Assembly (NCBI GenBank): GCA_053919585.1
Contig: CM132800.1
Length of the DNA: 64,000 nt
Strand: one strand, 5' to 3'
Source of the DNA: Euprymna scolopes
Lineage: Eukaryota
The position numbers and the translations under genes are program-made. This document shows, piece after piece, positions 8,645 through 60,290 of this stretch. Positions within the stretch are counted from its first letter, which is position 1. Each line of letters begins with the position of its first letter. The notes under the pieces were generated by a model. The model saw only the letters and a program-made list of their open reading frames with translations, did no database searches and was not told the DNA's origin.

Positions 8645-10063
8645 CTAAACCGTTCATCATGTCTGTATGCGTTATACTGTTTGTAGACATTTATTTACAA
8701 ATTAACGTCGACGCAGAAAACTATACGACTCTCCCTTCATGTTTTCATTGGTTACCCAACTCTGAACTGAATTTTATACGTCAAATACATTTTTTTATCA
8801 TAGAAATACAATTTAAATATTTTGTTTTTTTATCTTTTGTTTTGAACAATTCTGAGTCCAATTCTGAACTCGAATTAATGACTCAGGGCAAAAAATCGCC
8901 TTCTCACGATATCTGGATAGGAATCATCAATTCGACTCCAATATTTATAAGACTGGTATACTGGCTGGATGTCGATTTGAGTTCGACTATCAGCGTGATT
9001 AGACTCGAATATGTCCGAATTAACTATATAGTTCAGCTGATATTTGTCAAACTGATATTTTTTCTGCGATGATACGGGCATTTGCTGTGCGAAATAGACA
9101 TATTCACGGCGGTTAGATTAAAGATGAAAACCACTTTAAAAACAAACTAAAAGACAGCTAAAAAATAGAAGCCACTCACGAACATCATCTTAAACGTTGA
9201 ATTAATTTCAGCTTTTGAGAAAAAAAAGTATATAGAAAATATATTAAATTTAAAATGAAAATGGAGAAGCACAAAGAATATTAAAATGTAAGGTAATGAC
9301 CTGCTTCGTTACGTTTGAGAATCCTTTGGTGCGCATTATCAACGTTGTCTCGTCATAATAGTCATTAATCTGAACTGTTGCGAATATAAGTCTTTAATTA
9401 CATTTTATATTTGCATTCGAAGCTATTCATCTTCAACCATGTTTATAAATAAAGTGGGTTTTCATCATTCAAATTTAGAGAGCGTCTATATATGTAGGTA
9501 AATATTCTAATTGATTAAAATTGAAAGCATAAATAAATTGGTCATGAATAAAAGAATACATCTTTTGATGATAACAATTGTCTAGTATCAGCATCGCAAT
9601 ATTTTTACTCCACTTTTATTATAGTATATTTCAGATACAATTTCTTAAAACGTGACTAGCTTAAGTTCAGAATAAAATCACGATTTTCTTTTCACGGTTA
9701 ATTTAAAAAAATGTTTTGAACGCTGCTAACTCAATTTCTTTCACTACAGTTTGCAATTTGGAGACGGAATTGTTTTTGTTGAGATAAGTGATTTCAATTT
9801 TAATCATGCTTTTTATTTTAGATTTAAAATATTAATAACTCCATTTTATTTCTGTATTTAATTTGTGTATTTCTGTTTTATTAAATGCTAGCTTTTTTTT
9901 TCTCGTACATAAATGTTTATTTATCTACCGAGTTGATTGCAAAAATAGATTACGTATTGTACTCATTTTTAGTTCGTGTGAGGGGAATCTATCACCATAC
10001 TTTCCCTTAAACACGTCTGTTGGACTTTTATTAAGTACAATACATAATATTTTTTTTTAAATG

Positions 10064-13000
10064 GAGAGTAGAAAACGCATTGTGGATGCGTTATCGGCAG
10101 CTCCTGTTACTCTCGCTTCTTCTTATTTGTCCCTCAGTCCTCATTTTTTAATGAGTGATTTTTCTGACAAAGGGAGAAGAAAAAGCTGTTTTCTAGGTTG
10201 GCAGTATTTTGTGCGAACAGTTGGCAGAGATGGCGGAAATTTTCTGTTTCTATGTCTATCCTTGTAGCCATGTCACTAGTAAGGGTGCTGGAGGTAAACG
10301 TTTTGTCTGGGCTGACGTTATCCGCCTGATAGTCAGGGACCCGAACCTTGGATTAACCACCAAGGAGGCTGTCCTATCAGCAGGTGCAAAGTACTGGGGC
10401 TGCTATATTGCCATTTGGTGAATGGATTCTGGACCATGCAGTAGCTTCTGGTGGGGCCTCTCGATGCCATACTAGTGGGTAATTGTTACGGCTTTACCTT
10501 ATCATTAGCTACAAATAATAAAAAAAATTCTTCGTTTCTTTTTCTCTCTTAATTTCCCCTCTCTGTCCTGCTCTAAGTAAATCTGACGACCTAGTCCACA
10601 AATTTCAAAATTTCATCATGACAAGTTTCAAGAAAAAATACACGATTAAACCCGGTTCTCCAACTTCCAACGTAGACCCCTACTACCATGTCTCCTTCTC
10701 CAACATCAGGGGTCGACGTTCTAACCTTCCAGAGGTTGACACCCAATTACAGGAGACTAAACCAGACCTTTTATTTTTAAGTGAAACTGGCATTGGACAG
10801 GCTATTTCCCTAGAAGAGTTTGCAATTAAAGGATACTCTAACTTAACTTCTAAATCTGACCCCCAAATCGCCATGGGCATGGAATATGTGCCTATATTAA
10901 AAATAGCTTTCCATGTGGTAGGGACATCTCCAGGGAAGATTCTAACTTACCCTATATGTGCTTCCGGGTTGCTTTAGCTCACACTACGGCATTTTTATTT
11001 ACTCTCTATCCCCCACAAAGCGGAGTTACTATCTTTTAAAGCATATCTGAGAAAGTTGACCAAGTTCTATCTGCTTATCCTTCAGCTAACATTTACGTAT
11101 GTGGAGACTTCAATGTTCACAACGTCGAATGGTTGACCCACTCAAACAAGACCGATGATGAGGGGAGGTTCTGTGATGATTTCTCCATTGCCTATGACCT
11201 CACTCAGATTGTTCAGGAACCCACCCGTGTGCCCGACAATGACGGCCAGTATGCGAGCCTACTAGACCTTTTTCTCACAACTTGCCCTGAACTATGTTCA
11301 GTTTCTGTTCTGTCGCCTCTTGGATCTTCCGACCACTCTGTTGTATCAATTAAGATAAAAATGAAATGCAATACGTCCCCAGACGTACCTCTCCATCGTA
11401 CAGTATATCGATACACTAAGGCTGACTGGGATAGCTTCCGTACATTTATAACTGATCTACCTCTGCATTCCATATTTTAAAAGGATGTGTCCTCTATAGT
11501 ATTAGACCTTACGGAATGGTTAATTGTAGGTATTGATCGTTTCATACCCTCGAAAAAGTTTCAGCAAAAACCTAACAGCCAGCCATAGTTCTCTCCAGAA
11601 TGTGCTGCTGCCATTGCGCACAGAAATCACTTTTTCCACTGTTTCCAACGTAATAGATGTATGGAAACTAAAGCCGCTTTCAGGACGGCCAGCAAACACT
11701 GTAAGCAAGTAATAAAGAGCTCAAGATGGTTGTATGCTCAATCTGTTAAGTCCAAAGTAGCTGAACAGCGGCTTGGTTCCCACCAGTTTTGGCAAATAGC
11801 AAACAGAATTCTGAACAGAAGCGTGTGCTCAATCCCAACTATCATCAATGGACCTGAGGTAATCTCGTCAGCATCAGACAAAGCCAAACTCTTTGTCAAG
11901 AACTTTGCAGCTAATTCTACCTTTTGCGATCAAGGCCGCTAACCCCCAATATTTCCTCCTGTATCTGAAAACACACTATGTGATATACGGATATCTGTAC
12001 GTGATGTTGCCAAGCTAAGCAAAAACCTTGATTCCAGTAAAGCAACTGGCCCGGACGGTATTCCAATTATAGTACTCAAAAAACTTCAACCTGAACTAGC
12101 GCCCATACTTACAAAACTATTTAAACGTTGTCTTAAGGAGAATAGTTTCCCATCTCCCTGGAAAATTTCATCAGTATGCCCTGTATTTAAGAATTCAGGT
12201 GATCGCTCATCCCCCTCTCAGTACAGGCCAATAAGTCTCCTGTGCGTCATGAGTAAGTTGCTGGAATTTGTGTTAAATACAGAAGTAATCAACCATCTCA
12301 ACAAAAATAACCTTCTTAGTGAAACTCAATATGGTTTCCGTTCTGCTAGATCTACAGCAGATGTGCTTACAGTTATATCTCATAGGATTAGCAAATCGCT
12401 CGACGGAGGCAACCTTTCCAGGGCAATTGCTCTTGACATATCTAAGGCCTTTGATAGGGTTTGGCATAAAGGTTTACTTCATAAGATCTCTAGCTATGGT
12501 ATAGCTGGAAATGTCTTCTCAATTATTAAACCATTTCTTTCTGATAGGTTCATAAGAGTAGTAGTTGAGGGGCAAAAATCAGAAGCCCACAGTATTAATG
12601 CCGGTGTCCCGCAGGGGTCCATCCTGGGCCCAACTCTTTTTCTGATCTACATTAATGATCTTCCAAATCACATCCTTACATCAGTTGTAGACATTTATGC
12701 TGACGACACTACCATTTATAGTAGCACATCTAAGACAGTAAACGACCAAGTTCTCTCCAATTCTCTCTCCTCTGATCTTGAGCATGTAGTACAATGGGGA
12801 AAGGAGTGGCTGGTTACTTTTTATGCATCTAAAACCAAGCTTCTCTCTTTACGTCATCAACATTCTGATCCCCATCTAGCATCAATTGAAATGAATGGCT
12901 CTCGTCTTCAGGAGGCCTCAAGTTTTGACAAGCTTCTGGGCTTGACCATTACTCCTGATCTGAAATGGAACACGTACATCAAATCTGTTGCTAAGGCCGC

Positions 13001-13655
13001 TGGAAAAATGGTGGGATCTTTCTATCGATCCAGTAGATATCTCACTGCTGATACAATTCTCTATTTATATAAGAGCCAGGCACGTCCAAGGATGGAATAC
13101 TGTTGCCACATCTGGGCAGGAGCTGCTAAAGGACTTGTCCTGCCTTGATAGAGTTCAAAATAGACTTCGTAGCCTCGTAGGAGATGTCCTTTTCTCTTCC
13201 TTGCAACCTCTATCTCACAGAAGAGATGTTGCGAGTTTGTCTCTGATGTATCGTTATTTTTATGGAAAGTGTTCGACTGAGCTTCAATCTATGGCCCCCC
13301 TTGCAAAACTTTCACAAGAAACACTCGTCTAGCTGTAAACACTATCAATAATTCCCCCCACTCTTTATCTGTGCCTAAACCTAAACGTAGATTCCATGAA
13401 CAAAGCTTTTTTATTAGAACTGCACGCCTGTGGAATTGTCTTCCGTTTTCCTGGTTTCCGGCTGACTACAATATGGTTGTCTTCAAGTCTAACGTAAATA
13501 AGTTCTTGATGAGTCGTTCCATATAAGTTATCAAATTTAACAAATTTTTATTACTAATGATTATGATATGTTCCAATTTCTACTGTACACTCTTTAACCC
13601 TTATCATTGAGTGGCCTCTTGGCCTTGATAATGAGTTGATACCTATGAAAAAAAA
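10064..13655 (+). mobile_element. Near full-length CR1-group non-LTR retrotransposon (LINE A): structured leader, EN-RT ORF, 3' stem-loop, A-tail
   Basis: APE endonuclease motifs (SNIRG, LSET, GDFN, LLDLFL, SDHS) and RT motifs (QYGFR, ALDISKAFDRVWH, GVPQGSILGP, IYADD, MEYCCHIW). A-tail at 13648-13655. The 5' boundary is inferred from the start of structured, GC-richer sequence. Confidence 0.92.
10618..13526 (+). pseudogene. Disrupted APE endonuclease-reverse transcriptase ORF of LINE A
   Basis: Collinear ORF fragments 10618-10977, 11133-11480, 11661-11942, 12249-13148 and 12988-13332, separated by stops and frameshifts. Confidence 0.93.
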
Positions 13656-13819
13656 GTCCAATGTGAACAAGTTCTAATTGAATCGTCCCCCTAAGTAATC
13701 CAAGTTACAAAATTCCCACTTTTTACTATGCTAAAATCACAATGACTAATGTATACCTATACACCCTTATCCTTGAGTGGCCTCTGGGCCTTGATAAGTG
13801 GTGACACCCATGTAAAAAA
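13654..13819 (+). mobile_element. ~165-bp 3'-terminal fragment of a sister LINE fused to the A-tail of LINE A
   Basis: aagtccaatgtgaacaagttct parallels the ORF end aagtctaacgtaaataagttct (~13485). It carries a second copy of the cccttatc..agtggcc..ggccttgataag motif and a short A-tail. Confidence 0.85.
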
Positions 13820-14410
13820 CATATATAACTTTAGCCGTTTTCACTTAACTTATATAATCTGAAGTTTTAGATTTTACAATTATTGCTTAGCAAATATGGC
13901 TTCATAAAATAACAAGGGATAAAATATAGATGGAATCTGTAGTATTGCATTCAGACCTGTTTTTGATACATGTTTAACAAATTGCTGTCGTTTGAATCGA
14001 TCGGGGTTTATATTTTATGCAATCAGCGACGTTCTCATATACTAGTAATTTCAATTAGAGTGTAAGTGGTAATCTCCCGTCGTTGTATTGTGTTTTACTT
14101 TTAAAGCCAAAGGTCCTGTAAAATAAGTAAACCAATACTTGTATAACGAGCATTCTTTCTTCAATATTTCTCTACAATCGAACATTGTTATGGAATATGT
14201 ATGTTTATGTTTATACATTTGTACAGTGATATTCTATTGTTTACTTAGTTAGAGTGCATTATCCAAGTTTCTAACACGAATTAATTCATATATTTTATAG
14301 GGGGCTTGGCTAAAGATTAAAATGAAGTATACACTTTATAAGTGTTAGACACTTGGGGAATGGCCCTTAATCAACTAAATTACAGAATCGTACATTACAA
14401 ATGTAATATA

Positions 14411-31479: not shown

Positions 31480-34400
31480 GGCATGGTGGACGCGGGCGTT
31501 TGTTGCGGTCACTCTTCGTTGGAGCTCTCAGAAGAGGCGTCGGAACCATTGGCATCAGCGTTAGGGCGTCCAGTCATACCATCAGACTGAACTTCTTCAT
31601 CTTCATCGGAGCTCTCAGAAGGGGTGCTGGAACTATCGTCGGCAGCGTCAGGGTTCGCAGTTGTATCATCACGGGGAATAGGTCGGATGCACAGATGATC
31701 GTTGGATTATTCACCATTACTGCTACTCGCCAACTGGTTCATATTTACGGCATGCCGGATATCCTTCACATGGCGTGGGGTACCATCGACTAGCACGGTT
31801 TGCTTACTGATGATATCAGTTATTCGCCCTCTTTGAACGCTGTTGGTTCATCGATTATTGGGAGGCTTCACCCAGACACTGTCCCCTAACTCATACGGCC
31901 CTCGGGTTTCCTGCCAATCAGGCACACGGGCGTCTGTGTCCTTGATGCGCACTCGATAGCAATGGACCGCCTTGTTGGGTGCGCTTGCAGCAGTCATGCC
32001 ATCCTTTAGTGTTGCATTATATCTCTTGACCGCTTCTGCCATCGTGCATTGTTTTCTTGCCGCGATCCTCTTCACGCTTCGATTGCACCGCTCTGCTATG
32101 CCATTGCTACTCGACACACGTGCACATCTGTATCTGAGCTGGATCACCCACTTGTCTACGAAACGTCTGGAATCCCCACTGCAGAAGGCCGTGTCTTTGT
32201 CTGTGAGGATCTCTTCAGGTGGGCCCTTTAATAAAATATGGACTCCAATTCACAGATGACAATGGAGGAATCCTGTCTTATAAACGGGCGCCAGATCGCG
32301 AACCTTGTCGGTCCACAATCGATCAGAGTGAGGAAGTACTGGTTGCTGTAGTCAATTATGCCCATACCTGGACTATACTGAAAAAAAAATGGTCGGGTCC
32401 TTCTATCGATCCAGTAGATATCTCACTGCTGATGCAATTCTCTATCTATATAAGAGCTAGATACGTCCAAGGATGGAATACTGTTGCCACATATGGGCAG
32501 GAGCTGCTAGAAAAGACTTGTCCTGTCTTGATAGGGTTCAAAATAGACTTCGTGGCCTGGTGGGAGATGTCCTTTTCTCTTCTCTGCAACCTCTATCTCA
32601 CATAAGATATATTGCGAGTTTGTCTCTGCTTTATCGTTATTTTCATGGAAAGTGTTCGACTGAGCTTCAATCTATGCCCCCCTCGCCAAACTTTCACAAG
32701 AAAACCTCGTCTAGCTGAAAACACAATCAATAATTCCCCCCACTCTTTATCTGTGCCTAAACCTAAACATAGATTCCATGATCAAAGCTTATTTCTTAGA
32801 ACCGCACGACTGTGGAATTGTATTCCGTTTTCCTGCTTTCCAGCCATCTATAATATGGTTGTAATCAAGTCCAGCGTGAACAAGTTTCTGGTGAGCCGTT
32901 CCACTTAAATTAACAAATTTACCGAACTTCCATTACTATCGATTACTACATTGTCCTTTTGACTACTGTACACTCTTTAACCCTTATCCTTGAGTGGCCT
33001 ATCGGCCTTGATAAGTGGTGACGCCTATGTAAAAAAAAAACTAGTCGGCTCCAAGTCGTGTCTACTCTCAGCTGACCTTTCCGCCATCTGGCCGGGTTGG
33101 GGTCAATTGACTTGCATGTTTGTCAATCCTTGAATACCGCATTCACTACACATTTGGACACCGACGGATTGGACAACTGCACAAAATAACATGCCCATCT
33201 CACTTCGGGGTGTCCACTGAGGTAGTTTATCTTCCGGATTTCATCCTCCAACTCAATAGAGGCGGCACATAATGGCACTAGCTCGGTGTTCTTCATGGTG
33301 TCATCCCATCTCTGTGACACCCGAGTGAGCCTATACGCAAGGTTGCAATTTGAAGTGACCACTACCGCATCCGCAGACAGTTTGTAGTCTGTTACTTACC
33401 TTTTTACGGTCTCTGAGTTCCTTCTGATGAGCATCTCGCTGGCTGGCATAGTGCGCACGCTGGTCTTGCCTATTCGTGTATATGCTATCCAGTAGTACAC
33501 ACATGAATCCGTGTGTATCCGTAATATCCTGACTTTCCACTGCAGTGCCAGGTTGACACCTTTTATCACAGCATCGAGCTCTGCCAGGTTGATATGAGCA
33601 GCATCATTCACCGGTCGCAACAAGCAGGCGTCCTCAATCGCAGCCTCATACTTTTTCAACAGCATACCAATTGCCAGAGAGCTCGCATCCACCCACACGT
33701 TCAGTTTGTCTCCCTGCACGCACCAGTCTTCTTTGGCGGCGTCATCCTGCTTTAGCCTTGCGATGGTCTCCTTCACTATGCAAACCAACAGATCGTCGGC
33801 TGTTTCATCATCCCAGACTTTGGTGACTGCGCCTCACCTCCTTTTTATGATGCCTGTTGCAACACGATTTAATCCACACACTGGTAGGTGCCCCACAAGT
33901 TTTCCAAACAGGGAGAATACTGTTCGCCTCGTGAAGACATCGGGCACTGCAGGAACTGCAGTTCCGCGCCTCCCTTTCAAAATCCCTCCCTCCTGTCGAA
34001 CTTCAAAATCAAGACACGGACGCCATTCTCCAAACGGTCTGGGTCCTTGGACGTCAAACCGAACTCATCCAGTTTGGACCTTACACGTGATAATGACACA
34101 GTGTCTTCGTTCACATATATGTCATCAAGGTACGCCGATGTCTTATCTTTTATTGTTTCTTCCTGTGACAACACAGCGTTAATGATGGTCTTCATTATTT
34201 GGGGTGCGACGTTCAGCCCGAACCCTAGTCTAATACGGCAGTACCTCCTGCAAGCAAACATCACCGTCTGAAATTGCCATATTGTTTCCCTGATTCGGAC
34301 CTGCAGGTATGCTTTTCTTAGATTCAGCAGGGACACATTGCAACCCTGCTGGCGCCACTCTCGTAGCTTGCTGGAACAAATGCCAGCATCTGCCCTGATT

Positions 34401-35057
34401 GCATCAACATGCGCGTTCAGTTCACGGTAGACCATCACTGGCCTCACCTTTGCTTTGTTGTGCTGAGCAACCGCCATCAGCGGAATCAGGCCTCTAGGAG
34501 GTACAAGTTTCTCATAGGGGTAGGGAAATAACCAGCCATCCTTGATCCAATCACGAAGTTCCTCTTCGTATGCAGGACCCATTTGGTCGGGCACATGGTA
34601 CTCTGTTACCTCATTTCGCAGTTTGGCTGGTCTCTGGTTTTCCGACCACTTCCACGTGGCTGTCCAAGCCTTCTGCTGCTGGTCAAATTCGACAATAAAG
34701 TCTAAAGATTGATCAGCCAGACTGGGGCTTTCTTCTGAAACTGTACCGCCCCGTCTGCGTGAGCACCACCAAGAGCTCTGAGAGCATCATAGCCTAGAAG
34801 CAGGTCAAAGCTCAGCGGTTTCTCGAGTACTACCAGCGCTTGGACATTAGCTGAATTGCATGTTCTAGTGGGAATGTTCACAGCGCCCACCCCGCAACAT
34901 GTCCGCGTCGCTCCACTGAGGGTGGTTACTCTAGTAGTCTTCCTCGTCCACGTGCGGCAGAGATCCGCTCTCACTATGGTACGAGACAACCCCGAGTTGA
35001 AGAGAGCTGAGCACAATGTCTCATTGATTTAGACCTGAATGGACGGAAGCGCATCAT
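31480..35057 (-). pseudogene. pol: Gypsy pol (PR-RT-RH-IN), disrupted and interrupted by a LINE fragment
   Basis: ORF pieces 35016-34702 (protease, catalytic D mutated: ALFNSG), 34594-33977 (RT), 33788-33396 (RNase H), 33362-33123 (HHCC region) and 32147-31848 (integrase). Confidence 0.92.
32370..33040 (+). mobile_element. 5'-truncated LINE A-family copy nested in the Gypsy integrase
   Basis: Closely matches ~13000-13650 (MEYCCHIWAGA..., 3' motif, A10 tail). Removing it restores the integrase reading W-S-R-L-G-M. A 2-bp CT is repeated at the junctions. Confidence 0.95.
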
Positions 35058-35785
35058 CTAATTTCTGTCTGGGGAAGAGGTCGACGCTGGCACCTTGTCC
35101 CCGACCCCGTATTCCGAACAATCCCGGGCCATATGATTAGTATCATTACATCGGTAGCATCGAACGGCTGTCAATCGCCGCCGGCGGTTCCTCACAATGT
35201 GGCTCTGGCCATTGCACCTATAACAAACGACTTCACCACGCAGGCCGGGGCCTTGGTATGGTATATCATCACTGGATGCGGGATGTGCAGTAACAACTAC
35301 GGGTTCTCTTATCTCATAAGTATTCTTCATCACTGTCTGGCCCGGTCTACACTGTCATTAAGGGAAAATAAAGCTATGCTTGAGCTAGCCTGCAGGAGTT
35401 TCTTTGCTCCAGTTGGGAATCCTGCTAAAGATTTTCATGCCAAGACCCGCTCAGGCAGCCAACTAAACAACACCGTAAACTTCGTCAGCTCGGCAAAATA
35501 AACGGCGACAGTTTCGCCGGGATGTAAGCTTCTTGCCCCAAATCGCTCCCAAGCAGTGGCGGGGTCGATAGCAAACGCCTTGTATAATGCTACCTTGCTT
35601 TTTTCATACTCATATTTTTCCTCAGCTGTTGATATACCGTGAAAGCCCGCCGGACAGACGCAGAGGAACCACGTGTTCACTTCTCTTCACACTAGACAAC
35701 AGGCAATATAGTTCCACCTTCTCCACCCAGTCAAGTACTGGAGTCGAGACGTCGAATTCTGGTATTAATTTATTTGTCCCTCATT
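35058..35785 (-). pseudogene. gag: Gypsy gag (frameshifted) with zinc knuckles
   Basis: LIPEFDVSTPVLDWVEKVE; LHPGETVAVYFAEL; CYRCNGQSH.. and CYRCNDTNHMARDC. Confidence 0.88.
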
Positions 35786-35814
35786 ACGACGAAATAGCTT
35801 TCAGTTTAATGGGC

Positions 35815-36151
35815 TGGTAAACAGCAAAACAAAATAAAATAAATACAATAAGCAAAGGTTCAGCTAGAATTCGTCACTGTCAACTTTCTTTCTCCAGTTC
35901 CAGCACGTGTTCCCCCCCCAACGCCTCTGCCAACAGACATTTTATTAAAAAATTGATCCCATTCCATTTGCATACGTGTGCAGTAGAAGATGAGATCTCG
36001 TGAGATTCCACGACACTACATCATATAAATCCATGTCTGCCATTTTTAATTTCTTTCTCTCTCAGATCACATCCGAAGGTAAGTTGTATAACCGCACAAT
36101 AAACACACACGTGGGCGCGTTTTTCTTTGAGTATTACATGCAACTCTACCA
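35815..36151 (-). repeat. 5' LTR of the Gypsy element
   Basis: Minus strand runs TGGTAGAG...TTTACCA (5-bp terminal inverted repeat TGGTA/TACCA). Confidence 0.93.
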
Positions 36152-55007: not shown

Positions 55008-56574
55008 AAAATAAAAAATTGTATTTGGATTCATCAGATTACTGTTGTAATCTTTCGGTTGATGTAATCACTCCACCCCTCCTCCAAATATGGTTAGCCA
55101 TGTTACTGGAAGTGCTATGATACTAACTTTGTTATTTCTTCTCTTTTAAACTTCTTATTTCATTTTGTAATTTGTAATTATGTGTATTTTAATAATTTAT
55201 ATATGCATTTGTCTTTTTGTTTTCTTTGTTTAGTTTCAAATCCCCCCATCAAAACATCAACCACGTTCTCTTTCAGCTTAACTGATTAATTCTACGCTCT
55301 GTACTAAGGCGAGAGATAAAATACCTTAGGCAGGATAAATTTTCCGAAATTAGGACAAATGTGGATTTATTTTTTTCCTACCGTAGAAGCCAGAAGAACT
55401 TTATTTAAGTAATATACTTAATATCTACAATTGCCATATTCTTGCTGTATTAATAAAGAGGGATCGTTGATATCTCTACCAAACCTCTTGATATAGCTTA
55501 TAATTAACTGTTACTATACTTGTAACTGAAATCTACAGTGATCTTAGCTGCGTCACTAGGTTTTTTTTTCTGAATAGATACACTGTTTTGTCCTCAAACC
55601 TTTATGACTGCTAATAAATATGAATTCCGAATCACGACGAAATAATTGTTTCTCTTTACCTCCAAGACGACTGCCTATGTCTAACCTGCATGCAAAATAG
55701 GGGAAAAGAAGGGAAAATTTTATTTGTTTCTTCCAAGCTAAAACAATACTGTAAACTCTAAATCCTAATGAAACTTTACTGCATTCTGTAAGTTAATAAC
55801 CCCGACCCTTGAAATCTAACAATCTGCTCCCCCCTCTAGCTGTCACTAAAATCCTACATTACATATGCCTTAGTAGTAGAATCCTTAGCCTCCAGCTCCT
55901 AACTTTCACATGCTAACCGCCTAACAGTCATCACTAAACAGCTATACATTTCTACCTCTGACATGCATTAGGGTTCATTCCTATCCAGTTTGGTACTTAC
56001 CAGCCAAAATATGCTCTCGGATGCAAAGCGATCTTCATTACATAACAATGCCTCTTCCTCTTTTTGCAACAAACAATACTAAACCAAATCCGATACTCCC
56101 TGTTATGCAAAACGCTCGATGACTCTTAAAGGAAAACTTAATTTCTATTCCTTCAATAGTAGAAACACTAACACAACTTCTATCTATTTGCATCTACTAA
56201 AAACTTGCCCAAATATCTATTTACTTAATTATACATAGGAATACGCCATGACTTAAAATGTACCTCTAGTGATACCCTTACGGTACTGCACCTACATCTT
56301 TACCCTCCTAAATCTTAATATACAGTGACTGAGCAAAATTCTTAGCTAAATTCCTAATACATATTCACACTATAACGTTATCCTGTACCTAAACTAGCAT
56401 AAAGTTAAAAAAAATGGTAAAATCTAAAGGTAAAATTCTTAATCCGCACTAACGCCTTTTTAACAAGCCTGCTCATATAACTGCTTCCACTGCATGTCCC
56501 TAAATCACTTTGAGGAGTGTAACTATTCATTAGATATATAACCTCTACAAACAAACTCTGTAACATTAACTAAC

Positions 56575-59500
56575 CACGCGGGGTCGCAGAAATACCTAGA
56601 TTAGGACCCAGGCGCGGGGCAAACCCTCTCAGGGCTGATGGGACCAGTAGATCTTCCCAGATCCCCCATCTTGGAGAAGGAAAACGCTGAAACTAAACCA
56701 AAAGGGAGGGAGGCCTCTCCAGTCTTGGATGACAACCTTCCTAGAGCTGGTGACTCAATCAAATTACCGGCCTGCAAACCTAAATTGCTTAAGGAGTAGA
56801 TAGGCTCTGTCTATTGCCTGACTTCCATACTCCTTCTTTGCCTATTAGTCAGGCGCAGAGACACTATCACAGTGATTCGACAAAACACTTAGTGGTAGAT
56901 CTTGTTTCTTGTCTAGGGCAATGAATGCCGTTTCTTCACTCCCGACATATCGCACACCTTAAAACTGGGCATTTGGGAGTGCTTGAGTACCACACATGCC
57001 TGTGCAATTAGATTGGGGTGACCTTCTTCTGATTGGCTGAGGGTACCGTATTGACAGTTCATAACTGCTGTCTCCGACTGGTAGTACAATAGCCCTAACT
57101 CTTTGGAAGCGCTTAGAGCGGCTGCTCCATCAACAGTTGTATAATATCGGCATGTTTGTAATGCCATGTCGCGCATGGAAAGGGAGCCTGCACTCATCCC
57201 CGATGGGTTTTCCTGAGGCCATAGTCCTAGTTGAAGAAAGGTCAGCTAATGGGCTACTTGTGTTGCATGTCTGATACCCTGCATGACCTCTTGTTCAGCT
57301 CCCCCTTACCTAACTAAAACTCTTTAAAAACATGACAGTACAATAAAAAATAAGCTCATACCAGGCCTAGGGACAAACAAATCCAACTTGCCTCCTCCCT
57401 TGAGGCTTGCATTCACAAACATCCGTGGACGTAGAACTAATTAAGCTGATGTTGAAGCATTTCTCCTAACAAATACCCCGGATATCTTAGCACTATGCGA
57501 GACTAACCTACACTCCTCCATCCCCTCTAAAATGCCTGACTATCTCCCACTCTGCCGTAAGGACTCTGACAGACATATACACGGACTTTGAGTTTACATT
57601 CGTAACACCCTCCTCCTGATTAGAGAAAAAACCTAGAAACAGACGATCAAGCCTTATGTGATTTAGACTATACATACACCATAACATTAGCTACTTTTAT
57701 TTTCTCTACCGCTCTCCCTCTACCGAGGACTGCACTATAATAAACAAAGTCTCTGACGGCATAGACACATCACTCTTCCTCAACAATAGCGCACAAGTAC
57801 AGTATTTGGTGACTTTAATGTTCACCACAAAAAGTGGCTTGGATTCTCTACTCACACAGATGTAGCAGACAGCTCAACACATAGCTTTGCTATATCTCAC
57901 TCCCAATCACAAATGGTTACGTTTCCAACTCGTTTCCCTGACCAGCAAGAACAACTCGCATCACTTCTAGATCTGTTTCTGACATCGGTTCCCGAGGATG
58001 GTATAACAAATGCTTACATCTCACTCGGGAACGCTGACAATGCAGTGATAATGGTAGAAATCGCCCTAAATTCTAGACTCAAAACTGAAGAGCCATCACT
58101 CAAAACAACGAAATATTATACAAAGGCTGACTGGGAAAACATCATAGATCTTCATGGGGAAATCGTTTTTCTCTTCCTGCTGAACAGTGCGCAAATGAGA
58201 CCACTGAATTGTTCAAAACAGCAATTGAAGCACATGTTCCCATGCGGAAATTTTATAGCAAGCCCCACTCTCCCCAATGATTTACTTCTACTTGCGCAAC
58301 TGCCATTGCTCAAAGGCAGCATGCATACCACAAATTTAACCGACATAAGTCCAGTTCAAACAGACAGAAGTATATAGAAGTCAGAAGTTACGTTAAGAAA
58401 GAAATAGCAACAGCTAAGAGAGAATTTACTGAAACCACTAAAAACGCATCGAAACACAAAAATTAGGAACTTGTGACTTCTGGAAAATCTACGACGGTGT
58501 AGTAAATAATGGGCAATCAACAATTCCCCCCTAACGAACAATCACTAGGTTGTTTGTTCAGCAACCGACAAGGCTAATATGCTTACCAGCCGGTTTGCCT
58601 CAAACTCCCTACTGGACCCTTCCAACCACCCCTGCCTGACTTTCCTTTGCGGACAGACGGCACGCTAGACGATCTAAAAATCACCCCTTCTCAGGTGCAT
58701 GCTATCATAAAAAAACCTTGACACTTCAAAAGCATGTGGACCTGATCTCATCCCAGCTGTGCTATTAAAAAAGTGCTCAGCCGAAGTAGCTCCAGTTCTC
58801 TCCAAACTCTACAACAAAATGCCTTAATGAACCATGCTTTCCGGGCTTTTTAAAACTGCTGCTGTGGTACCAGTATTCAAGAATTCTGGCGAAAGAACTG
58901 ACCCATCAAATTATCGCCCCATTTGCCTCCTCCCGCCAAAATATTTTAGACCATAATGAACCATGCTCTAGTCCGTCACCTTACAGATGCTAAACTTCTG
59001 ACTGACAAAAAATATGGATTTAGACAAGCCCGTTCAACAGCAGACATCCTCACTGTAATCTCTGAACATATATACCATTCACTGGACAAAGCGGGAGAGG
59101 GCCGAGCGGTAGATCGAGATATATCTAAGGCTTTTGACAGGGTATGGCGTGAGGGTCTCCTCAGTAAAATTAGATCATACGGTATCACTGGTAAAATACT
59201 TAACATAATTAAATCCTTGTTAGATAAGAGAAAAATCCAGGTTGCCCTCGACGGTCGTACATCTAAACAATATGATATAAATGCGGGAGTGCCTCAGGTG
59301 TCTATCCTTTGACCTCTATTGTTCCTAATATTTATAAATGATATCCCTGTCAAAACTGCCTGAGATTGGTATATATGCTGATGACACCAGACTCTATATC
59401 AGACATGACAGGAAAAAAATAAACACATAACGAAAGAAATGACAAAAACACTAGAGGATGACCTCCAGTCTGTAGTGGAATGGAGACAAACATGGATGGT

Positions 59501-60290
59501 CACATCCAATGCTGCCAAGACTAAACTGGTTTCCTTCAATAATTACAAGAAACCTTATTTGTCACCAATAGCAATGGCCAGTGACTTTCTATCTGAGAGT
59601 ACATCTTTCAAACTGTTTGGCCTAACGTTCGCAGGAAACATGAGTTGGAACAATTATATTGAAAACATTGCCAGGGCCGCTGCGAAGAAGGTAGGCTTCT
59701 CTCTACCGTGCTAGAAAACTACTGACACCTCAAAGTATCATTTACCTCTATAAGGCCACAATTCGCCCATGTATGGAGTATTGCTGTCCCATTTGGGCTG
59801 GTGCACCTGCTACTAGTCTCTCGCTCCTAGACAAGGTTCAAAAGAAAGTCGCCAATCTGCTAGGCCCTGAACTGGCATCTAATCTTCAGCCTCTGCCCCA
59901 TCAGCGAAACGTTGCATCCCTCTGCCTTTTCTACAAGCATTTTAATGGTGAATGCTCTGTCGAACTGCAGACACTAGTGCCCCCACGACGTAGACACTCC
60001 CAACAAACCCGACAGGCAAATCCCACCCCCATGCAGTAGAGATCCCTAGATGTAAAAGATCTTTCTACTCCAGTAGTTTCTTCCCCAGAACCGCTAGACT
60101 CTGGAATTCCATCCCAGATCCCTGCTTCCCCAACTGTACTGACATGCAGAAGTTCAAGTGTAACGTGAAAAGACATCTTGCTCTCCAAATCCTAACGTAA
60201 TGCCCCAGTAGTTGCTGCCCCTGATAGTAGCCCCTACACCAAAGTGGCAATGTGCCTTGTTTGGGGTAAAAATTAAAAAAAAAATAAAAA
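56575..60290 (+). mobile_element. Near full-length CR1-group LINE (LINE B, a different family from LINE A) with a ~750-nt structured leader
   Basis: FTNIRG, LALCET, GDFNVHH, LLDLFL, KYGFRQARST, DISKAFDRVW, GVPQ, IYADD, MEYCCPIW. 3' stem-loop at 60231-60266, then an A-rich tail. Confidence 0.92.
57332..60200 (+). pseudogene. Disrupted EN-RT ORF of LINE B
   Basis: Fragments 57913-58377, 58956-59312, 59439-59714 and 59773-60039, plus intervening motifs. Confidence 0.9.

What the first reader, a model, noticed from the sequence alone, without database searches (positions are those of the whole stretch)
10064..10617. LINE A leader is also structured, has no recognisable ORF1, and shares ordered motifs with the LINE B leader
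Seen: helices gagagta/tactctc enclosing aacgcat/atgcgtt, cactagta (10276) / tactagtg (10470) closing a ~200-nt domain, ctgatag/ctatcag and ccttgg/ccaagg. Motifs collinear with LINE B, despite strongly diverged ORFs: ggagaagaaaaagctg (10173) vs ggagaaggaaaacgctg (56673); gcagaga..tgtttctatgtcta (10224-58) vs gcagaga..tgtttcttgtcta (56855-915); ggctgct..tgccat..atgga in both. Inference: a homologous RNA module conserved across two LINE families. It either replaces ORF1 or is an inter-ORF element in copies that lost ORF1.
Basis: partly seen in the sequence, partly recalled or inferred. Interest (0 to 1): 0.7.

Follow-up and report, generated by a model that had tools for sequence, protein, structure and literature searches.

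The report
Conserved folded leader RNA of ORF1-less LINEs
The stretch is the downstream part of the 5' untranslated leader of a young, abundant jumping gene (a LINE with a single protein gene), and it holds folded RNA modules that at least ten related LINE families keep by compensating base changes; what they do is untested, and helping the enzyme gene to be translated is my leading guess.

Summary

**Extent of LINE A.** It has thousands of copies at 98-99% identity. It does not start at 10064. Copies share sequence upstream to about 9642. That upstream AT-rich part is nearly as numerous in the genome as the leader.

**ORF1.** None exists in A, in B or in relatives. The single APE+RT ORF starts at 10618.

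**Conserved structured modules.**
- Both lie upstream of ORF2, in the same order and spacing, in A, B and the fetched metagenome LINE families (ten families for M2, nine for M1).
- In M2, 94% of cells pair against about 40% in slid controls, and 30 of 49 pairs show double changes.
- A shared block lies between the modules, and a cUACGg hairpin follows M2.

**What failed.**
- ctgatag/ctatcag shows no covariation.

**What the modules are not.** M2 is not coding and matches no Rfam family.

**Function.** Untested. I favour an IRES-like role; ORF2p binding is the main rival.

The parts
9642..13828 (+). LINE A, this copy (ORF2 broken by stops and frameshifts). Layout: 5' UTR 9642-10617, ORF2 from 10618, 3' UTR with stem-loop, poly(A).
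   Evidence: Homology to other genomic copies spans 9639/9642 to 13819-13828. Contigs of polyA RNA-seq runs lie on it from about 9642 and none lies on 9400-9600. Poly(A) tail and the CTTATCA..TGATAAG stem-loop.
9642..9909 (+). AT-rich 5' unit ('monomer'), tandemly repeated in other copies
   Evidence: Extra upstream matches to 9642-9901/9909 in L005, L006, L015, L016, L019, L020, L022 and L024. The L064 flank is the end of a preceding unit.
9910..10062 (+). Unique AT-rich 5' UTR segment ending in a poly-T tract of variable length
   Evidence: Shared by 29 of 30 copies inspected. An exact 24-mer from it occurs 2345 times in the genome, against 2565 for M1.
10063..10115 (+). Module M1 of LINE A: helix GAGAGUA/UACUCUC enclosing hairpin AACGCAU/AUGCGUU
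   Evidence: Covariation across 9 families. It lies 200-257 nt upstream of M2 in every family.
10153..10195 (+).
   Evidence: A 10137-10259 aligns with the L087 M1-M2 interval (z 11, 0 of 300 shuffles). B 56891-56935 aligns with the same L087 block (z 3.8). The hairpin is read from the sequence only.
10274..10477 (+). Module M2 of LINE A: ~204-nt multi-branched domain, 49 modelled base pairs
   Evidence: Covariance model R1 scores 198 bits, E 6e-58. Covariation. Profile homology to B: E about 1e-10.
10483..10495 (+). M3: small hairpin with UACG loop (motif UGCUACGGC in relatives; weaker stem in A)
   Evidence: Motif conserved just after M2 in 8 of the 9 families aligned (loop changed in L071, absent in L072). 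G-C and C-G pairs flank the loop in 8 of 9 sequences.
10528..10574 (+). 47-nt pyrimidine tract, ending 43 nt before the ORF2 AUG
   Evidence: Computed. Tracts of 12-75 nt end 3-49 nt before the AUG in 8 of 10 families.
10618..10620 (+). ORF2 start codon of LINE A (APE + RT protein, 965 aa in intact copy L065:1567-4461)
   Evidence: ORF lists. Pfam Exo_endo_phos, Exo_endo_phos_2 and RVT_1. The ORF2 N-terminus is homologous to B by tblastn.
55120..57332 (+). 5' UTR of LINE B (an older family, copies 91-93% identical to the window's copy)
   Evidence: Homology among copies begins at 55120 in about 10 of 29 copies. Full-length copies have no + strand ORF of 75 aa or more there.
56792..56845 (+). 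Module M1 of LINE B: AGGAGUA/UACUCCU enclosing GAUAG/CUAUC
56891..56935 (+).
   Evidence: Aligns with the intervals of L072 (z 12-14), L067 and L088 (z about 7), and L087 and L086 (z about 4).
57032..57229 (+). Module M2 of LINE B
   Evidence: R1 scores 173 bits, E 1.5e-50. Also.

Best explanation
Positions 10064-10617 are the downstream, GC-richer half of the roughly 975-nt 5' UTR of a young poly(A)-tailed LINE with one ORF (APE endonuclease plus reverse transcriptase) and no ORF1.

From 10063 to the ORF2 AUG the UTR is a collinear series of RNA elements:
- M1, a helix enclosing a hairpin;
- a conserved block;
- M2, a ~204-nt multi-branched domain;
- a small hairpin with a UACG loop;
- a pyrimidine tract;
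- the AUG.

The LINE lineage inherits this series vertically and maintains it by selection on the sense-strand RNA fold. LINE B carries the same series.

Shown: homology, structure conservation, absence of coding, absence of ORF1, and presence in polyA RNA libraries.

Inferred: the modules act in cis on the LINE mRNA. Most likely they bring ribosomes to the ORF2 start codon (IRES-like or shunting), past a long, AUG-rich leader that scanning from the cap would handle poorly.
For: **Family and extent**
- More than 2693 candidate copies at 98-99% identity.
- Homology among copies runs to 9642.
- Exact 24-mer counts: upstream 2345, M1 2565, M2 3166, ORF2 5' part 7845. This is the usual 5'-truncation gradient.

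**Homology A vs B**
- Local alignment z 8.2.
- nhmmer E 1e-9 to 1e-11 in both directions.

**Breadth**
- M2 was found by HMM or covariance model upstream of ORF2 in L066, L067, L069/L070, L071, L072, L086, L087 and L088.

**Structure**
- MAFFT-only alignment: 89% of cells paired against 41-51% in slid controls, 24 of 45 pairs with double changes, 0 of 500 shuffles reach this.
- Model-fitted alignment: 94%, 30 of 49 pairs.
- M1: 90% against 47-58%, 8 of 11 pairs.
- Near-invariant G-U pairs fix the strand.

**Vertical descent**
- M2 identity tracks ORF2 identity (Spearman 0.68).
- M2 averages 77% nucleotide identity while ORF2 proteins average 57%.
- In DNA searches of the genome with the relatives' leader plus ORF2 start, only M2 matched.

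**Not coding**
- Open frames differ between families, indels are not multiples of 3, and the peptides are unrelated.
- tblastn of leader frames is insignificant; no Pfam hit.

**Fits a translational role**
- 3-12 AUGs lie between M1 (M2 in L071, whose contig starts there) and the start codon.
- A pyrimidine tract ends 3-49 nt before the AUG in 8 of 10 families.
- The spacer between M2 and the AUG is 41-232 nt.

**RNA**
- Contigs of three polyA/oligo-dT RNA-seq runs from two studies cover 9642-11400.
Against: - No functional test exists, and M2 matches no Rfam IRES or other family.
- The domain alone is not more stable than shuffled sequence (z -0.1 and -0.4).
- The distance from M2 to the AUG varies five-fold. 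That is unlike the compact viral IRESs that place the AUG directly.
- Pyrimidine tracts are common in AT-rich genomes, and two families lack one.
- The RNA evidence is assembled contigs only. It gives no start site, no strand and no expression level, and DNA carry-over cannot be excluded.
- All relatives come from unnamed metagenome contigs, so the taxonomic breadth is unknown.
- The covariation rests on about 10 families, some of them close (L086 and L087 ORF2 are 82% identical).
Confidence: 0.7

Rival explanations
1. The structured leader is a binding platform for the element's own ORF2 protein. It would nucleate the RNP, or control the second-strand steps of integration, in a LINE that has no ORF1 chaperone. 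This is what the 5' protein-binding RNA of the single-ORF element R2 does.
For: - The element has a single ORF and no ORF1.
- The loops and junctions of M2 are strongly conserved in sequence, not only the helices. Blocks such as AGGGUAC, GAUAGUACAG, CCCGAAC and GGAGGCUG are invariant, as expected for a specific protein or tertiary contact.
- The variable distance to the AUG is no problem for this model.
- Precedent from my own knowledge of the R2 literature (Christensen, Ye and Eickbush 2006; Kierzek et al. 2009); I did not re-read these papers here.
Against: - Most genomic copies are 5'-truncated and lack the leader (7845 ORF2-5' words against 3166 M2 words). Integration itself therefore does not need the leader on the copied RNA.
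- There is no excess of leader-bearing short derivatives, which a cis-acting mobilisation signal might produce.
- The R2 enzyme has a different endonuclease type (restriction-like, not APE), so the mechanism does not transfer directly.
Confidence: 0.2
2. One of the modules is a self-cleaving ribozyme, like the HDV-like ribozymes in the 5' UTRs of R2, RTE, L1Tc and other LINEs. It would trim read-through or co-transcripts and leave a 5' end that favours translation.
For: - Compact folds with nested helices are conserved in a LINE 5' UTR.
- An A/T-rich tract directly precedes M1 in all families.
- HDV-like ribozymes are reported in several LINE clades (Ruminski et al. 2011, as cited in PMC5786205).
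Against: - No Rfam ribozyme family matches, even at E up to 10.
- The region upstream of M1 is retrotransposed with it in about 91% of copies (2345 vs 2565), and M1 is almost as frequent as M2. Genomic 5' ends do not pile up at either module.
- RNA-seq contigs run through 9642-10100.
- No double-pseudoknot pairing was evident by eye, and I did not search for pseudoknots systematically.
Confidence: 0.06
3. The shared segment is a decayed remnant of an ORF1 (or another coding sequence), and the similarity between A and B is residual coding conservation.
For: - One reading frame is poor in stops across M2 in several families. It is open for 102 aa in L067, 83 aa in L071 and 63 aa in A.
- Most A copies carry two small ORFs of 55 and 63 aa.
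Against: - The open frames are not the same frame in alignment coordinates. Indels between families are not multiples of three, and the peptides share only RLIV.
- No Pfam hit, and tblastn of the leader frames gives E of 0.2 or more.
- The pattern of change is base-pair compensation with G-U pairs.
- The AUG of the 55-aa ORF is absent from the other families.
Confidence: 0.03

Closest known systems
[quoted passage not shown]
   Same: - A non-coding block in the middle, not at the end, of the 5' UTR of single-ORF LINEs, conserved across very distant hosts and of unknown function.
- One relative here (L086:344-366, 30 nt before its M1) matches the only 23-nt piece of that domain printed in the paper at edit distance 3. 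None of 200 shuffled 23-mers came closer than 5.
   Different: - The 23-mer is absent from A and B.
- That paper reports sequence similarity only, with no secondary structure or covariation.
- The LINEs here have a poly(A) tail and a 3' stem-loop, and the only named homologue is annotated like Jockey/CR1-group elements. Their clade was not determined, and RTE membership is not shown.
- The full domain sequences (Repbase) were not available to compare.
R2 5' UTR: HDV-like ribozyme and conserved 5' pseudoknot / protein-binding RNA
   Same: A single-ORF LINE without ORF1 whose 5' RNA carries conserved structure acting in cis (processing, translation initiation, protein binding).
   Different: - R2 is site-specific and co-transcribed with rRNA, has a restriction-like endonuclease, and its ribozyme sits at the very 5' end.
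- Here the element is dispersed and APE-type, and the modules lie 420-630 nt inside the UTR.
- No ribozyme model matches.
- 5' ends do not pile up at the modules.
Viral and retroelement IRESs (picornavirus types I/II with a pyrimidine tract before the AUG; mouse L1 inter-ORF IRES reports)
   Same: A long multi-domain structured leader of about 550 nt with many upstream AUGs and a pyrimidine tract shortly before the authentic AUG.
   Different: No sequence or structure match to any Rfam IRES family. The spacer length is variable. Activity is untested.
Single-ORF members of the L2/CR1 group (for example zebrafish ZfL2-2 and eel UnaL2; from my own knowledge)
   Same: APE+RT ORF only, no ORF1, and a 3' stem-loop near the tail.
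   Different: I know of no conserved structured 5' UTR described for these, and my literature searches found none. The clade relationship to LINE A/B is not established here.

Membership tests
LINE with ORF1 (two-ORF architecture) | An ORF upstream of ORF2 encoding an RNA-binding or other ORF1 protein | tested here: not met
   - Intact A copies have only ORFs of 55 and 63 aa with no Pfam hit.
- Full-length B copies have no + strand ORF of 75 aa or more in 1.7 kb.
- Upstream ORFs of the relatives have no Pfam hit, and their frames are not conserved.
HDV-like self-cleaving ribozymes of LINE 5' UTRs | Match to an HDV-like or CPEB3-type covariance model (nested double pseudoknot) | tested here: not met
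   cmscan of 9600-10700 and 55100-57400 against Rfam 15 at E up to 10 gave only chance-level snoRNA, lncRNA and miRNA hits.
HDV-like self-cleaving ribozymes of LINE 5' UTRs | The ribozyme defines the 5' end of the retrotransposed RNA | tested here: not met
   A word 50-70 nt upstream of M1 occurs 2345 times against 2565 for M1. Copies extend to 9642.
HDV-like self-cleaving ribozymes of LINE 5' UTRs | Self-cleavage in vitro | not testable with these tools
   This needs transcription and a cleavage assay.
IRES | Cap-independent internal initiation conferred on a downstream cistron | not testable with these tools
   Only circumstantial evidence: 3-12 upstream AUGs, a pyrimidine tract, and a structured domain before the AUG.
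IRES | Similarity to a described IRES family | tested here: not met
   No Rfam IRES family matches at E up to 10.
RTE 5'-UTR conserved domain / Ceph-domain 3' half (Kojima 2018) | Sequence similarity to the conserved domain | tested here: inconclusive
   Only a 23-nt piece is printed in the paper. It is absent from the window at up to 3 mismatches, and the best edit distance is 8 in the A and B UTRs. L086:344-366 matches at distance 3, which 0 of 200 shuffles reach.
RTE 5'-UTR conserved domain / Ceph-domain 3' half (Kojima 2018) | The host LINE belongs to the RTE (or Vingi) clade | not tested
   No reference RT set was available. The poly(A) tail, the 3' stem-loop and a Jockey/BS-type name on the only named homologue argue weakly against RTE.
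Conserved structured RNA (general criterion) | Compensatory base changes beyond shuffled and slid controls, in an alignment not fitted to the structure | tested here: met
   - M2 on MAFFT alignment A2: covariation score 0.457 against 0.08-0.15 for slid controls, and 0 of 500 shuffles reach it.
- M1 on A7: 0.501 against 0.09-0.24.

The most novel reading that the evidence does not exclude
The M1-M2 leader is a new class of ribosome-recruiting RNA (a cellular or retroelement IRES) that lets an ORF1-less metazoan LINE lineage translate its only ORF from a leader of 1 kb or more, rich in AUGs. In that sense a folded RNA stands where other LINEs have ORF1 and termination-reinitiation. A less likely version is that one module is a self-cleaving ribozyme of an undescribed class.
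Probability: 0.3. Interest if true: 0.75.

Novelty: new variant of a known kind. Interest (0 to 1): 0.55.

Why it matters
How LINEs without ORF1 get their long, AUG-rich mRNAs translated and packaged is poorly understood outside R2. This leader is a roughly 550-nt RNA whose fold is documented by natural covariation in at least ten families. It is better conserved at the nucleotide level than the enzyme gene behind it, and the element has thousands of young copies that appear in polyA RNA libraries.

That makes the question directly testable with reporters, probing and protein binding. It also gives a covariance model that can annotate this LINE group. It may connect to the unexplained conserved 5'-UTR and SINE-body domains noted by Kojima (2018).

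The value is limited. The function is unknown, the host range is unknown, and other windows of this same genome have already raised the same kind of element.

Tried and rejected
- Plain blastn of the A against the B leader found nothing significant and would have wrongly dismissed the finding. Gapped local alignment and profile search were needed.
- Rfam at permissive thresholds gave only chance hits.
- MFE z-scores were uninformative for the domain.
- The coding or ORF1-remnant reading was rejected.
- Searching the genome with the relatives' leaders found only older A subfamilies, 91-97% identical to A.
- The covariance-model scan of the genome returned only A copies among the 150 scored. Its '541,577 candidates' is labelled rough, and I do not use it.
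- P0059 sits on a 4.3-Mb contig and gave no DNA.
- All RNA-seq runs were held as contigs, so no transcription start, strand or level could be read.
- The protein atlas gave no clade name or useful taxa.
- The TSD of the window copy could not be recognised by eye.
- The LINE clade (CR1/L2/Jockey-like vs RTE) was not resolved.
ORFs were read copy by copy. HMMs and the covariance model were built on non-coding leader segments only.
- The 512 N positions in the window were not touched.
Full report
**What is at the coordinates**

The window is AT-rich eukaryotic DNA (about 30% G+C) from a 5.9-Gb genome that other notes of this scan call molluscan. A G+C-richer block at about 10000-14000 holds a decayed LINE copy, LINE A. 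A second block at about 56500-60000 holds LINE B.

- An intact A copy encodes one 965-aa protein with AP-endonuclease and reverse-transcriptase domains (L065:1567-4461).
- In the window this ORF starts at 10618 and is broken.
- The element ends in a stem-loop (CTTATCA..TGATAAG) and a poly(A) tail at about 13828.

**The leader is longer than flagged**

- The genome holds more than 2693 candidate copies of 10040-10640 at 98-99% identity.
- In 29 of 30 inspected copies the similarity continues upstream of 10064, across a poly-T tract of variable length.
- Homology starts at scattered points between 9642 and 9963, as expected for 5' truncation. About half of the copies start at 9642.
- In several copies the ~265-nt unit 9642-9909 is repeated in tandem further upstream.
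- Exact 24-mer counts give a normal truncation gradient: upstream unique part 2345, M1 2565, M2 3166, ORF2 5' part 7845.
- The AT-rich 9642-10062 therefore belongs to the retrotransposed RNA. 10064 is not a 5' end, and 5' ends do not pile up at the structured modules.
- LINE B is older (copies 91-93% identical to the window's copy; more than 5773 candidates). Its homology runs upstream to 55120, which is 1.7 kb before its structured part.

**Is the A/B similarity real?**

- blastn finds nothing significant.
- A gapped local alignment finds A 10287-10476 = B 57036-57231 with z=8.2 against dinucleotide shuffles.
- Profiles built from 30 copies of each family find each other with E of 1e-9 to 1e-11 over the same core, roughly A 10308-10476 = B 57060-57229.
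- At the protein level only the ORF2 N-terminus matches.

**Relatives**

A word search with the intact A ORF2 found many unnamed proteins of 45-68% identity on short ENA metagenome contigs. I fetched eleven contigs carrying ten of these proteins.

- The core, which I call M2, lies upstream of ORF2 in L066, L067, L069/L070, L071, L072, L086, L087 and L088.
- It is absent in L068 and L073.
- Counting A and B, that is ten families.
- Their ORF2 proteins average 57% identity, while M2 averages 77% nucleotide identity.
- The two measures are correlated (Spearman 0.68), which fits vertical descent with the element.
- I searched the genome with the relatives' leader plus ORF2 start. Only the M2 part matched, and always in older A subfamilies.

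**Structure of M2**

RNAalifold on a plain MAFFT alignment gives a multi-branched fold.

| Measure | MAFFT alignment | Model-fitted alignment, 12 sequences |
|---|---|---|
| Cells paired | 89% | 94% |
| Cells paired, partners slid by 1-3 columns | 41-51% | about 40% |
| Pairs with changes on both sides | 24 of 45 (slid: 4-9) | 30 of 49 |
| Shuffles reaching the observed score | 0 of 500 | 0 of 500 |

- Near-invariant G-U pairs mean the fold exists only on the sense strand.
The supported register is CGCCUG/CAGGUG.
- Minimum free energy alone would not have flagged the domain (z about 0).

**A second module and the rest of the leader**

The sequence upstream of M2 in all families shows a shared design: a G-rich strand, then UAG, a hairpin, a linker, and the complementary strand.

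- In B it is aggagta/tactcct around gatag/ctatc (56792-56845).
- This module, M1, lies 200-257 nt before M2 in all nine families with enough upstream sequence.
- It covaries: 90% paired against 47-58% slid, and 8 of 11 pairs have double changes.
- Between M1 and M2, A 10137-10259 aligns with the L087 interval (z=11).
- B 56891-56935 aligns with the same block of L087, L086, L067, L088 and L072 (z 3.6-14).
- Just after M2 most families have UGCUACGGC, a small hairpin with a UACG loop.

**Not a gene**

- A copies carry ORFs of 55 and 63 aa, but neither the start codon nor the frame is kept in other families.
- The frames that happen to be open across M2 differ between families. Indels are not multiples of three, and the peptides share only four residues.
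- Pfam finds nothing in any upstream ORF.
- Full-length B copies have no + strand ORF of 75 aa or more in the 1.7 kb before M1.

**Function (inferred)**

- The AUG of ORF2 lies 41-232 nt after M2.
- 3-12 AUGs lie between M1 and the start.
- A pyrimidine tract ends 3-49 nt before the AUG in 8 of 10 families. In A it is 47 nt long, at 10528-10574.
- The UTR before M1 adds 420 nt (A) to 1.7 kb (B) of AT-rich sequence.
- This suits internal or shunted initiation, which I rank first.
- Binding of ORF2p, by analogy with the 5' RNA of R2, is the main rival.
- A ribozyme is unlikely, given the Rfam blanks and the copy-number profile.
- Contigs of three polyA/oligo-dT RNA-seq runs from two studies cover 9642-11400 and nothing before about 9600. 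Contigs cannot show start sites or exclude DNA.

**Known relatives of the idea**

- Kojima (2018) described a conserved domain in the middle of RTE-clade 5' UTRs that also forms the 3' half of the cephalopod Ceph-SINE domain. That paper has no structural analysis.
- Its only printed 23-mer is absent from A and B but matches L086:344-366 at edit distance 3, just upstream of that family's M1.
- The link is a lead. I could not obtain the domain sequences or name the clade of LINE A/B.
- Literature searches found no description of this structured leader.
- Earlier notes of this scan on other windows of the same genome describe what is probably the same element. One follow-up reached the same conclusion. 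I treat these as leads and re-derived everything here.

**Verdict**

The finding is real and moderately interesting. It is a conserved, multi-module structured 5'-UTR RNA of an ORF1-less LINE lineage, shared by LINE A and LINE B. Its boundaries and motif correspondences are corrected above. Its function is still open.

Noticed in passing
window 9642-9909; L005, L006, L015, L016, L019, L020, L022, L024: The first ~265 nt of LINE A are tandemly repeated two or three times in other copies. This resembles the 'monomer' 5' repeats of mouse L1 and may be the promoter.
   Followed up: partly
window ~9895-9905 and ~10045-10058: Two poly-T tracts inside the 5' UTR vary from about 9 to 30 nt between copies, sometimes as (TTTA)n. 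One copy (L021) has lost everything between them.
   Followed up: partly
window ~13475-13828: The 3' UTR of LINE A holds two diverged (about 72%) copies of a ~180-nt unit. Each ends in the stem-loop CTTATCA..TGATAAG, and a poly(A) tail follows. Most full-length copies share this.
   Followed up: partly
L086:344-366: A relative's leader matches 20 of 23 letters of the Ceph-SINE/RTE 5'-UTR motif printed in PMC5786205, 30 nt before its M1. This hints that the leader is related to a SINE body domain.
   Followed up: partly
L073:220-1121 and L068:1467-2391: The two relatives without the structured module (ORF2 45-54% identical to A) have upstream ORFs of 125-175 aa with no Pfam hit. These could be an ORF1 in sister lineages.
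   Followed up: no
window ~32000-36000: A third G+C-rich block (47-49% G+C) with many short ORFs on both strands. It carries neither M1 nor M2, and I did not identify it.
   Followed up: no
window 55120-56790: LINE B has a 1.7-kb AT-rich, ORF-free 5' extension before its structured leader. This is four times longer than that of LINE A.
   Followed up: partly
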